Program-made: the position numbers and the translations under genes
The notes under the pieces: model-generated
What the model saw: the letters and a program-made list of their open reading frames with translations, nothing else
The model's database searches: none
What the model was told of the DNA's origin: nothing
Source of the DNA: Iphione sp. A-MEVVRFRX5
Lineage: Eukaryota
NCBI GenBank assembly: GCA_976226885.1
Contig: OZ320323.1
Location: 49,662,001-49,726,000 of the forward strand
Direction of reading: 5' to 3'
DNA length: 64,000 bases
Shown here: one piece after another, positions 18,449-18,555 of the stretch
Position numbering within the stretch: the first letter of the stretch is position 1
How the letters are laid out: each line of letters begins with the position of its first letter

Positions 18449-18555
18449 AACGTCTCGCCTTGCTGACAGAACATCTCCAAGAGTAGGAGATCGATTCGGA
18501 GGTTCTCCGTGGACCATTCCTGGCCCTGGTCCTGGACTAACGCTGTGCAGGCCAT
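18449..18555 (-). CDS. RASEF: Alternative EF-less first coding exon of RASEF (MACTALVQDQGQEWSTENLRIDLLLLEMFCQQGET), phase 2
   Basis: ATG in CCACCATGG Kozak context; 107 nt open; donor TT|gtaagt; phase 2 joins exon 11301 in frame (F-QEHVCELY). Confidence 0.65.

What the first reader, a model, noticed from the sequence alone, without database searches (positions are those of the whole stretch)
18449..18555. Hidden EF-less third start exon deep in the large first intron
Seen: CCACCATGG Kozak ATG, 35 open codons (MACTALVQDQGQEWSTENLRIDLLLLEMFCQQGET) and a consensus gtaagt donor in phase 2, in frame with exon 11301. It is missing from the ORF track. Purine/pyrimidine and G-run tracts lie upstream (18700-19080). 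Inference: a Ca2+-independent isoform that could heterodimerise with EF-containing isoforms through the shared coiled coil.
Basis: partly seen in the sequence, partly recalled or inferred. Interest (0 to 1): 0.72.

Follow-up and report, generated by a model that had tools for sequence, protein, structure and literature searches.

The report
Conserved EF-less start exon of RASEF
A short third alternative start exon in a worm's RASEF (Rab45-type transport adaptor) gene is kept, with its start codon, reading frame and splice site, in two related species, so it probably makes a version of the protein without the calcium-binding head, as is already known for mouse Rab45.

Summary
On the minus strand there is ccaccATGg at 18555, then 35 open codons, then TT|gtaagt (last exon base 18449), in frame with the common exon at 11301.

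That layout alone is not rare. The same intron holds 7 ATG + at least 35 codons + GTRAG arrangements.

Conservation decides the case. No RNA run was listed, so I walked along the genomes of two related species (ENA assemblies ERZ25767047 and ERZ26222911). Both carry the same exon at the collinear place, between the second EF-hand exon and the common exon. In all three species:
- The first in-frame ATG gives 107, 110 and 110 nt.
- An in-frame stop lies 27-42 nt upstream.
- The exon ends TT|GTRAGT in phase 2.

Second codon positions are 75-96% identical and third positions 25-54%. In the closer pair pS is 0.68 and pN 0.18. Introns are otherwise unalignable.

No third EF-hand exon exists in any of the three species.

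My own rival idea, that this is an internal exon 2 of the first EF module, failed. That module's real exon 2 is 37648-37447.

Best reading (about 0.75): a real alternative coding first exon that gives an EF-less RASEF isoform. Transcripts, the transcription start and dimerisation are untested.

EF-less short forms of large Rabs are already described (PMC8303950), so this is a new member of a known kind.

The parts
18449..18555 (-). Exon 1c, coding part: ATG at 18555, 35 codons plus 2 bases (TT), ending in phase 2. The conserved core is residues 12-35 (QEWSTENLRIDLLLLEMFCQQGET).
   Evidence: Sequence read. Orthologous exons lie at L012:11173-11282 and L015:16403-16512. Coding-type substitution pattern. 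Unique in its own genome.
18443..18448 (-). 5' splice site gtaagt of exon 1c.
   Evidence: Both relatives have gtgagt after the same TT. The blastn alignment to relative 1 runs through the site to 18442.
18598..18600 (-). In-frame TGA stop 42 nt upstream of the ATG, which closes the frame on the 5' side.
   Evidence: The relatives have in-frame stops 36 and 27 nt upstream of their first ATG.
18573..18574 (-). The only AG between that stop and the ATG (17 nt before the ATG, entry phase 1). It is a weak acceptor-like site with G at position -3.
   Evidence: I considered it as an internal-exon acceptor and judged it unlikely to be used.
18706..18832 (.). TC/GA-rich low-complexity tract upstream of exon 1c. 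It is not conserved in the relatives.
   Evidence: TRF. Relatives' upstream sequence.
11151..11301 (-). Common exon (ex3), the acceptor partner. It starts with the C that completes the Phe codon, then QEHVCELY...
   Evidence: It is 90% and 78% identical at the amino-acid level in the relatives, with the same |C start. It matches octopus RASEF residues 122-174.
38140..38365 (-). Exon 1a: EF-hand pair, start module A, donor in phase 1.
   Evidence: 91% amino-acid identity in relative 1.
37447..37648 (-). Exon 2a: linker of module A (phase 1 to phase 2). This is the true partner of exon 1a.
   Evidence: ctgcag|AA ... AGCAG|gtaagg. Relatives' proteins continue with EFTxxL after the EF-hands. Found in relative 1.
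30865..31265 (-). Exon 1b: second EF-hand pair plus linker, start module B, donor in phase 2.
   Evidence: 50% and 47% amino-acid identity in the relatives.
5792..9465 (-). Downstream coiled-coil exons of the same gene. Conserved blocks lie at about 9465-9366, 7636-7493, 6351-6262 and 5878-5792. The Rab-domain exons lie beyond the window start.
   Evidence: Rab exons at G000:C26:49655469-49655597, 49651021-49651128 and 49650578-49650697 on the minus strand.

Best explanation
Window 18555-18449 (minus strand) is a real, selectively maintained, protein-coding alternative 5' exon (exon 1c) of a RASEF/Rab45-type large Rab GTPase gene.

Translation would start at its own ATG. The exon would splice from TT|gtaagt to the common exon at 11301. 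The product would be an isoform whose first 35 residues replace the EF-hand pair and linker of start modules A (exons 1a+2a) and B (exon 1b), while the helical/coiled-coil region and the Rab domain are kept.

Shown here: the exon, its ATG, its frame, its donor and their conservation, and the absence of any third EF-hand exon.

Inferred:
- The exon is transcribed from its own start site just upstream, or after a non-coding leader exon.
- Because it lacks the EF-hand pair, which in this adaptor class is the proposed dynein-contact and calcium-sensing head, the short form is calcium-insensitive and is a weak or non-activating dynein adaptor.
- It can still bind membranes through the Rab domain and pair with long forms through the coiled coil.
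For: 1. Collinear orthologous exons in two species. Relative 1 is at L012:11173-11282 and relative 2 at L015:16403-16512 (also on the second haplotig, L014). Each lies between module B and ex3.

2. All three species share these features:
- The first in-frame ATG has A at position -3.
- The coding length is 107, 110 and 110 nt.
- An in-frame stop lies 42, 36 and 27 nt upstream.
- The exon ends TT|GTRAGT in phase 2.
- The ex3 acceptor is followed by C.

3. The substitution pattern is that of coding sequence. Identity by codon position is 0.67/0.96/0.54 (ours vs relative 1), 0.42/0.75/0.25 (ours vs relative 2) and 0.38/0.75/0.33 (relative 1 vs relative 2). Over the 24-codon core, ours vs relative 1 gives pS 0.68 and pN 0.18 (Fisher p = 4.6e-4). 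The other two frames show no such bias.

4. Over 31 kb, the significant collinear blastn hits to relative 1 (E below 1e-8) are exons 1a, 1b, 1c, ex3 and ex4 only.

5. GC by codon position resembles the true exons.

6. The exon is unique in its own genome, so it is not a repeat.

7. The only EF-hand exons in the window and in both relatives are those of modules A and B.

8. The gene is RASEF-like. It has an EF-hand pair, an ex3/coiled-coil match to octopus RASEF, and Rab exons 86-88% identical to octopus RASEF 6-11 kb beyond the window.

9. There is precedent. Mouse Rab45-S, mouse Rab44-S and C. elegans 4R79.2b lack the EF domain (PMC8303950). Rab45 and CRACR2a are EF-hand dynein adaptors (PMC6504896).
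Against: - There is no transcript evidence of any kind. No RNA run was listed, so read laying could not be used.
- No transcription start or promoter signal is conserved. The upstream tracts differ between species.
- The first 11-14 residues are not conserved in sequence.
- The exon was not detected in a crinoid or in octopus.
- None of the 120 best RASEF proteins in the database has a short N-terminus directly before the ex3 segment.
- A word search with the 48-aa ORF was blank.
- A masked N stretch (19113-19346) lies about 560 nt upstream and was not examined.
Confidence: 0.75

Rival explanations
1. The exon is internal. It would be spliced from exon 1a (phase-1 donor at 38140) to the AG 17 nt before the ATG (18574-18573), as an alternative to exon 2a. 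The isoform would then still carry EF-hands but have a different linker, and the ATG would be incidental.
For: - An AG with entry phase 1 lies 17, 17 (or 14) and 14 nt before the ATG in the three species.
- Exon 1a ends in phase 1.
- Exon 2a and this version of 1c would both run from phase 1 to phase 2 (202 and 124 nt).
Against: - Position -3 of the AG is G in this species and in relative 1, and the pyrimidine tract is weak.
- In relative 2, module A is one uninterrupted exon ending in phase 2. No phase-1 donor exists there, yet the exon is conserved.
- The residues between the AG and the ATG are unrelated between species (ALSST, ENYVK).
- The ATG position is kept: the conserved Trp is residue 14, 15 and 15.
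- Proteins from relatives show the EF-hand exon followed by the 2a-type linker.
Confidence: 0.07
2. The block is conserved for another reason and is not a productive RASEF start exon. It could be a poison or regulatory exon, a separate micropeptide, or a regulatory element whose frame-like pattern is fortuitous.
For: There is no expression data. The exon is short. Only three species were sampled. No annotated protein carries it.
Against: - Three-base periodicity of conservation, with near-saturated third positions.
- The donor and its phase match ex3 in all three species.
- The ATG and the upstream stop are conserved in position.
- A stand-alone micropeptide would not need a phase-matched donor. 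Read-through ends one or two codons after the donor.
Confidence: 0.12
3. It is a chance ORF in an intron, and the similarity in the relatives is random.
For: The bare ATG-ORF-donor layout is common: 7 cases of at least 35 codons in this intron.
Against: - tblastn and blastn hits fall at the collinear place in two species (E = 7e-9 for DNA in relative 1).
- A profile built from the three peptides scores 75-81 bits on the three exons, and under 5 bits on every other open segment searched in the same three introns.
- The substitution pattern is that of coding sequence.
Confidence: 0.03

Closest known systems
Mouse Rab45-S (short RASEF isoform, 530 aa, mainly testis), as described in the large-Rab review PMC8303950
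   Same: It is a product of a RASEF gene that keeps the coiled-coil and Rab domains but lacks the N-terminal EF-hand domain, alongside a long EF-containing form.
   Different: The worm exon has no detectable sequence relation to it. The worm form would keep the whole helical region from ex3 onward and would add a lineage-specific 35-36-residue head. It is so far only predicted from genomes. The worm gene also has two EF-hand heads (A and B), not one.
Mouse Rab44-S and C. elegans 4R79.2b (EF-less isoforms of Rab44-type large Rabs; PMC8303950, PMC8016136)
   Same: They are N-terminally different isoforms that drop the EF-hand domain. For Rab44 the short form localises differently and hardly responds to ionomycin.
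   Different: They come from a different paralogue. Rab44-S also loses half of the coiled coil. No homology to exon 1c is known.
Alternative EF-hand first-exon modules A and B of invertebrate RASEF (RefSeq isoforms in crinoids, sea urchins, starfish and molluscs; earlier scan note s1-327865)
   Same: It is the same gene and the same principle. Mutually exclusive 5' modules all end in phase 2 and join the same common exon.
   Different: Modules A and B encode EF-hand pairs and are old: both are present in the crinoid locus L016. Exon 1c encodes no EF-hand. It was found only in this worm and two relatives. It shows no profile similarity to the tail of module B (hhalign probability 0.07%).
EF-hand class of dynein activating adaptors (Rab45, CRACR2a, Rab11FIP3, ninein; PMC6504896, PMC7655957)
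   Same: The long forms of this gene have that architecture: an EF-hand pair followed by a coiled coil, with a Rab domain as in Rab45.
   Different: The 1c form would lack the EF-hand pair. By inference it would lack that class's N-terminal dynein contact and calcium sensor. This was not tested.

Membership tests
RASEF/Rab45-type large Rab GTPase (the gene) | N-terminal EF-hand pair | tested here: met
   Pfam EF-hand_7 and EF-hand_1 match exon 1a (E = 4e-15) and exon 1b (E = 2e-12).
RASEF/Rab45-type large Rab GTPase (the gene) | Helical/coiled-coil region after the EF-hands, homologous to known RASEF | tested here: met
   tblastn with octopus RASEF (P0142) matches ex3 and three downstream exons, covering residues 122-302. 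No coiled-coil prediction was run.
RASEF/Rab45-type large Rab GTPase (the gene) | C-terminal Rab GTPase domain on the same strand downstream | tested here: met
   Three exons 6-11 kb beyond the window start, on the minus strand, are 67-88% identical to the octopus RASEF Rab domain.
RASEF/Rab45-type large Rab GTPase (the gene) | C-terminal prenylation motif | not tested
   The last exon was not fetched.
EF-less short isoform of a large Rab (Rab45-S-like) | The coding start lies downstream of all EF-hand exons, and no EF-hand is encoded between the start and the common exon | tested here: met
   Only two EF-hand exons exist in the window and in both relatives. Exon 1c has no Pfam hit. An in-frame stop lies upstream.
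EF-less short isoform of a large Rab (Rab45-S-like) | The transcript and protein exist | not testable with these tools
   The look-up of sequencing runs listed no RNA run. No database protein carries the exon.
Alternative first (coding) exon | Conserved start codon, closed frame upstream, conserved donor in a phase compatible with the common exon | tested here: met
   in three species.
Alternative first (coding) exon | Own transcription start site or promoter | not testable with these tools
   There are no 5'-end data. The upstream sequence is not alignable between species. A non-coding leader exon cannot be excluded.
Duplicate of the module A/B linker helix | Detectable sequence or profile similarity to the tail of module B or A | tested here: not met
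   hhalign of the 1c alignment (A1) against the module-B tail alignment (A2) gives probability 0.07%. There are no tblastn hits between them.

The most novel reading that the evidence does not exclude
The conserved acidic-hydrophobic core of exon 1c (W-x4-L-x2-DLL-x5-C-x-Q, predicted helical) is not just a filler start. It would be a third, functional head that docks a different partner, or folds back on the common helical region. The one gene would then switch between a canonical calcium head, an altered head and a calcium-blind head with its own binding activity.
Probability: 0.15. Interest if true: 0.55.

Novelty: new member of a known kind. Interest (0 to 1): 0.36.

Why it matters
RASEF/Rab45-type proteins join a Rab, a coiled-coil dynein adaptor and an EF-hand head in one chain. 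Which head is used should decide whether and how cargo transport responds to calcium.

This worm lineage seems to encode three heads on one gene: two EF-hand variants and none. The EF-less head is under purifying selection, which points to a regulated, possibly tissue-specific, short adaptor comparable to the testis form Rab45-S of mouse.

It is also a practical annotation point. A 107-nt coding first exon about 7 kb upstream of the common exon is easily missed by gene callers, and it could only be recognised here by comparison with relatives.

Tried and rejected
1. My first idea was that the exon is exon 2 of module A, using the AG at 18574-18573 in phase 1. I rejected it. The true exon 2a is 37648-37447, and proteins from relatives show that linker after the EF-hands. 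See also the first rival explanation.

2. RNA evidence: the look-up of sequencing runs listed no run, so read laying could not be used at all.

3. A word-index protein search with the 48-aa ORF found no candidate. Because of the length window this says little.

4. The representative search with exon 1a was dominated by multi-EF-hand proteins. It did yield the relatives' fragments and octopus RASEF.

5. Paralogy of exon 1c with the tail of module B is not supported. An eye-level W...[LI]DL resemblance is all there is.

6. A search for exon 1c with a 3-species profile was negative in:
- the crinoid locus L016, identified as Anneissia japonica from the 573-aa neighbouring gene and the contig length;
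- octopus L017;
- the short contig L023.

7. The 120 best full-length RASEF proteins were screened for a short N-terminus before the ex3 segment. There was none except a partial entry. EF-less entries there start further downstream.

8. A third EF-hand exon hidden between module B and exon 1c was not found in this species or in the gap-free relatives.

9. The helical-wheel moment of the core is low. AlphaFold2 on the 3-sequence alignment gives a helix at residues 16-34 with mean pLDDT 73. For so short a peptide this is weak evidence.

- The N stretches (19113-19346 and about 22050-22650) were not filled or looked up.

Full report
**What is there.** On the minus strand, one search shows ccaccATGg with the ATG at 18555. 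It is followed by 35 open codons (translated), then TT and gtaagt, so the last exon base is 18449 and the exon ends in phase 2. The TC/GA tract (18706-18832) and the G-runs (19047-19082) upstream are real.

**The gene.** Pfam finds EF-hand pairs in two minus-strand start exons:
- 1a: ATG at 38365, donor after 38140, phase 1.
- 1b: ATG at 31265, donor after 30865, phase 2.

Exon 1a has its own second exon, 2a, at 37648-37447. Its acceptor is tttttctgcag|AA in phase 1 and its donor is AGCAG|gtaagg in phase 2. [quoted passage not shown] Three Rab-domain exons, 67-88% identical to that protein, lie 6-11 kb beyond the window start on the same strand. The gene is therefore a RASEF/Rab45-type large Rab with two EF-hand start modules, A (1a+2a) and B (1b). 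Both end in phase 2 and join the exon at 11301. This agrees with earlier scan note s1-327865 and adds exon 2a to it.

**Is the bare pattern more than chance?** No. In the intron 30864-11302 on this strand, ATG + at least 35 open codons + GTRAG occurs 2, 4 and 1 times in phases 0, 1 and 2. With at least 20 codons the counts are 14, 9 and 2. A first hint beyond chance is composition. GC at codon positions 1/2/3 is 0.60/0.34/0.77, like the true exons. Only 0.6% of 1174 non-coding open 35-codon windows in the window reach that GC3-GC2 gap. The exon is single-copy in the 1.18-Gb genome. A short repeat family lies beside it at 18276-18329 but does not include it.

**A rival of my own, rejected.** The only AG between the upstream in-frame stop (TGA at 18600-18598) and the ATG lies 17 nt before the ATG, with entry phase 1. 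That fits the phase-1 donor of exon 1a. I therefore suspected an internal exon. Four results argue against this:
- The representative search with exon 1a returned fragments from relatives in which the EF-hands are followed by an EFTxxL...RRR...LDEGFxxLS[WC] linker. In P0129 and P0142 the ex3-type sequence then follows. That linker is exon 2a.
- In relative 2, module A is one uninterrupted exon ending in phase 2. No phase-1 donor exists there.
- The AG has G at position -3 in this species and in relative 1.
- The residues between the AG and the ATG are unrelated between species.

**Relatives.** Instead I used P0007, a 91% identical exon-1a ORF, to reach a 788-kb contig of ENA assembly ERZ25767047. 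I walked along it with three look-ups.
- tblastn and blastn place exon 1a, exon 2a, exon 1b (50% amino-acid identity), ex3 (90%) and ex4 in the same order as here.
- Between 1b and ex3 there is a hit to the candidate, L012:11200-11280.
- Over 31 kb, the significant collinear DNA matches (E below 1e-8) are exons 1a, 1b, the candidate, ex3 and ex4. Everything else is unalignable.

A second, more distant species (ERZ26222911, two haplotigs) has 76% identity in exon 1a and 78% in ex3. It has the same element between 1b and ex3, at L015:16427-16510.

**Anatomy in three species.**

| Feature | This worm | Relative 1 | Relative 2 |
|---|---|---|---|
| First in-frame ATG context | ccaccATGg | gtgaaaATGg | ttaataATGa (a second ATG three codons on) |
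| Coding length (nt) | 107 | 110 | 110 |
| Position of the conserved Trp | 14 | 15 | 15 |
| In-frame stop, nt upstream of the ATG | 42 | 36 | 27 |
| Donor after TT | gtaagt | gtgagt | gtgagt |

In every species ex3 starts with C after the acceptor AG, so the junction codon is TTC. The N-terminal 11-14 residues differ freely. The core W-[ST]-x-[EQ]-[NQ]-L-x2-DLL-[LI]-[LM]-[ED]-[MF]-[FL]-C-x-Q-[GD]-x-[ST] is kept.

**Coding signature.** Identity by codon position:

| Pair | Position 1 | Position 2 | Position 3 |
|---|---|---|---|
| Ours vs relative 1 | 0.67 | 0.96 | 0.54 |
| Ours vs relative 2 | 0.42 | 0.75 | 0.25 |
| Relative 1 vs relative 2 | 0.38 | 0.75 | 0.33 |

For the 24-codon core, ours vs relative 1 gives pS 0.68 and pN 0.18 by Nei-Gojobori counts (Fisher p = 4.6e-4). 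For comparison, ex3 gives pS 0.76 and pN 0.07 in the same pair. The other two frames show no excess of synonymous change. With synonymous sites near saturation, neutral DNA should not align, and indeed the introns do not. The block is therefore kept as protein in this frame. A profile of the three peptides scores 75-81 bits on the three exons, and under 5 bits on every other open segment searched in the same three introns.

**EF-less?** tblastn with both EF-hand exons finds only modules A and B in the window and in both gap-free relatives. With the frame closed upstream and the ATG position conserved, the product would begin with the exon 1c peptide and continue into ex3 without EF-hands. Whether exon 1c is the very first exon or follows a non-coding leader exon cannot be told without RNA data.

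**Reach and relations.**
- The exon was not detected in the crinoid locus L016, which does carry modules A and B, nor in octopus L017.
- Among the 120 best full-length RASEF proteins, every entry with an ex3-type segment has at least about 96 residues before it. The exceptions are a partial entry and a spurious, near-zero-score match. So no annotated counterpart exists in that list.
- EF-less entries in that list start further downstream, for example the sea-urchin isoform X5.
- Profile comparison with the tail of module B gives nothing, so an origin by duplication of the linker is not supported.
- AlphaFold2 on the three-sequence alignment predicts a disordered start and a helix at residues 16-34 (mean pLDDT 73). 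This is weak evidence for so short a peptide.

**Comparison with what is known.** The large-Rab review PMC8303950 states that isoforms are a common feature of this family:
- Mouse Rab45-S (530 aa, mainly testis) keeps the coiled coil and Rab domain but lacks the EF domain.
- Mouse Rab44-S lacks the EF domain.
- C. elegans 4R79.2b lacks the EF domain.

In PMC8016136, Rab44-S localises differently and hardly responds to ionomycin. PMC6504896 shows that Rab45 and CRACR2a are dynein-activating adaptors with EF-hands followed by a coiled coil, and suggests the EF-hands contact dynein. It also cites the report of Rab45 self-association.

From this I infer, without having tested it, that the 1c form is calcium-blind and poor at engaging dynein, but still Rab-anchored and able to pair with long forms. 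That makes the finding a new, lineage-specific member of a known kind of isoform, not a new principle.

**Limits.** There are no transcripts, no start-site data and only three species. The N stretches were not inspected.

**Verdict.**
- The structural interpretation is supported by conservation. The functional part is untested.
- Confidence is about 0.75 for a real EF-less alternative start exon.
- Interest is modest (0.36).

Noticed in passing
window 37447-37648 (-), compared with L015:10001-10387: Module A is split by a phase-1 intron (after ...EGFK) in this worm and in relative 1. In relative 2 and in several other fragments the EF-hand and linker form one uninterrupted exon. So an intron was gained or lost within the clade. 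In the crinoid locus the A module is split at a different place, inside the second EF-hand (L016:6754-6894 and 7395-7523).
   Followed up: partly
window 18276-18329: A ~54-nt element about 120 nt downstream of the exon 1c donor belongs to a dispersed repeat family. The own-genome search gave 310 first-look candidates, and the 40 scored were 86-98% identical. It is probably the end of a small mobile element.
   Followed up: no
window 11531-11566 (-): A weak partial copy of the start of the common exon (CELFQNFRNVHI against CELYQSIHNVQI) lies about 230 nt upstream of the real acceptor. This fits the separate scan note on decoy acceptors (s1-327949).
   Followed up: no
L016 (NCBI GCA_011630105.1, crinoid) and the proteins: The two EF-hand start modules A and B are annotated as RefSeq isoforms in crinoids, sea urchins and starfish (tails of the ...DFxLLSC type against the ...W[EQ]xF...LxPS type). 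Molluscs show further N-terminal variants without recognisable EF-hand loops. The multi-head design of RASEF is therefore old and widespread.
   Followed up: partly
window 11150-9465, compared with relative 1 (merged coordinates 33185-33616): The intron between ex3 and ex4 is about 1.7 kb here but only about 430 nt in relative 1, whereas the upstream introns are longer in relative 1. Intron sizes change quickly and unevenly in this clade.
   Followed up: no
window 19113-19346 and about 22050-22650: N stretches lie inside the intron upstream of exon 1c. They were not examined, so a leader exon or promoter element there cannot be excluded.
   Followed up: no
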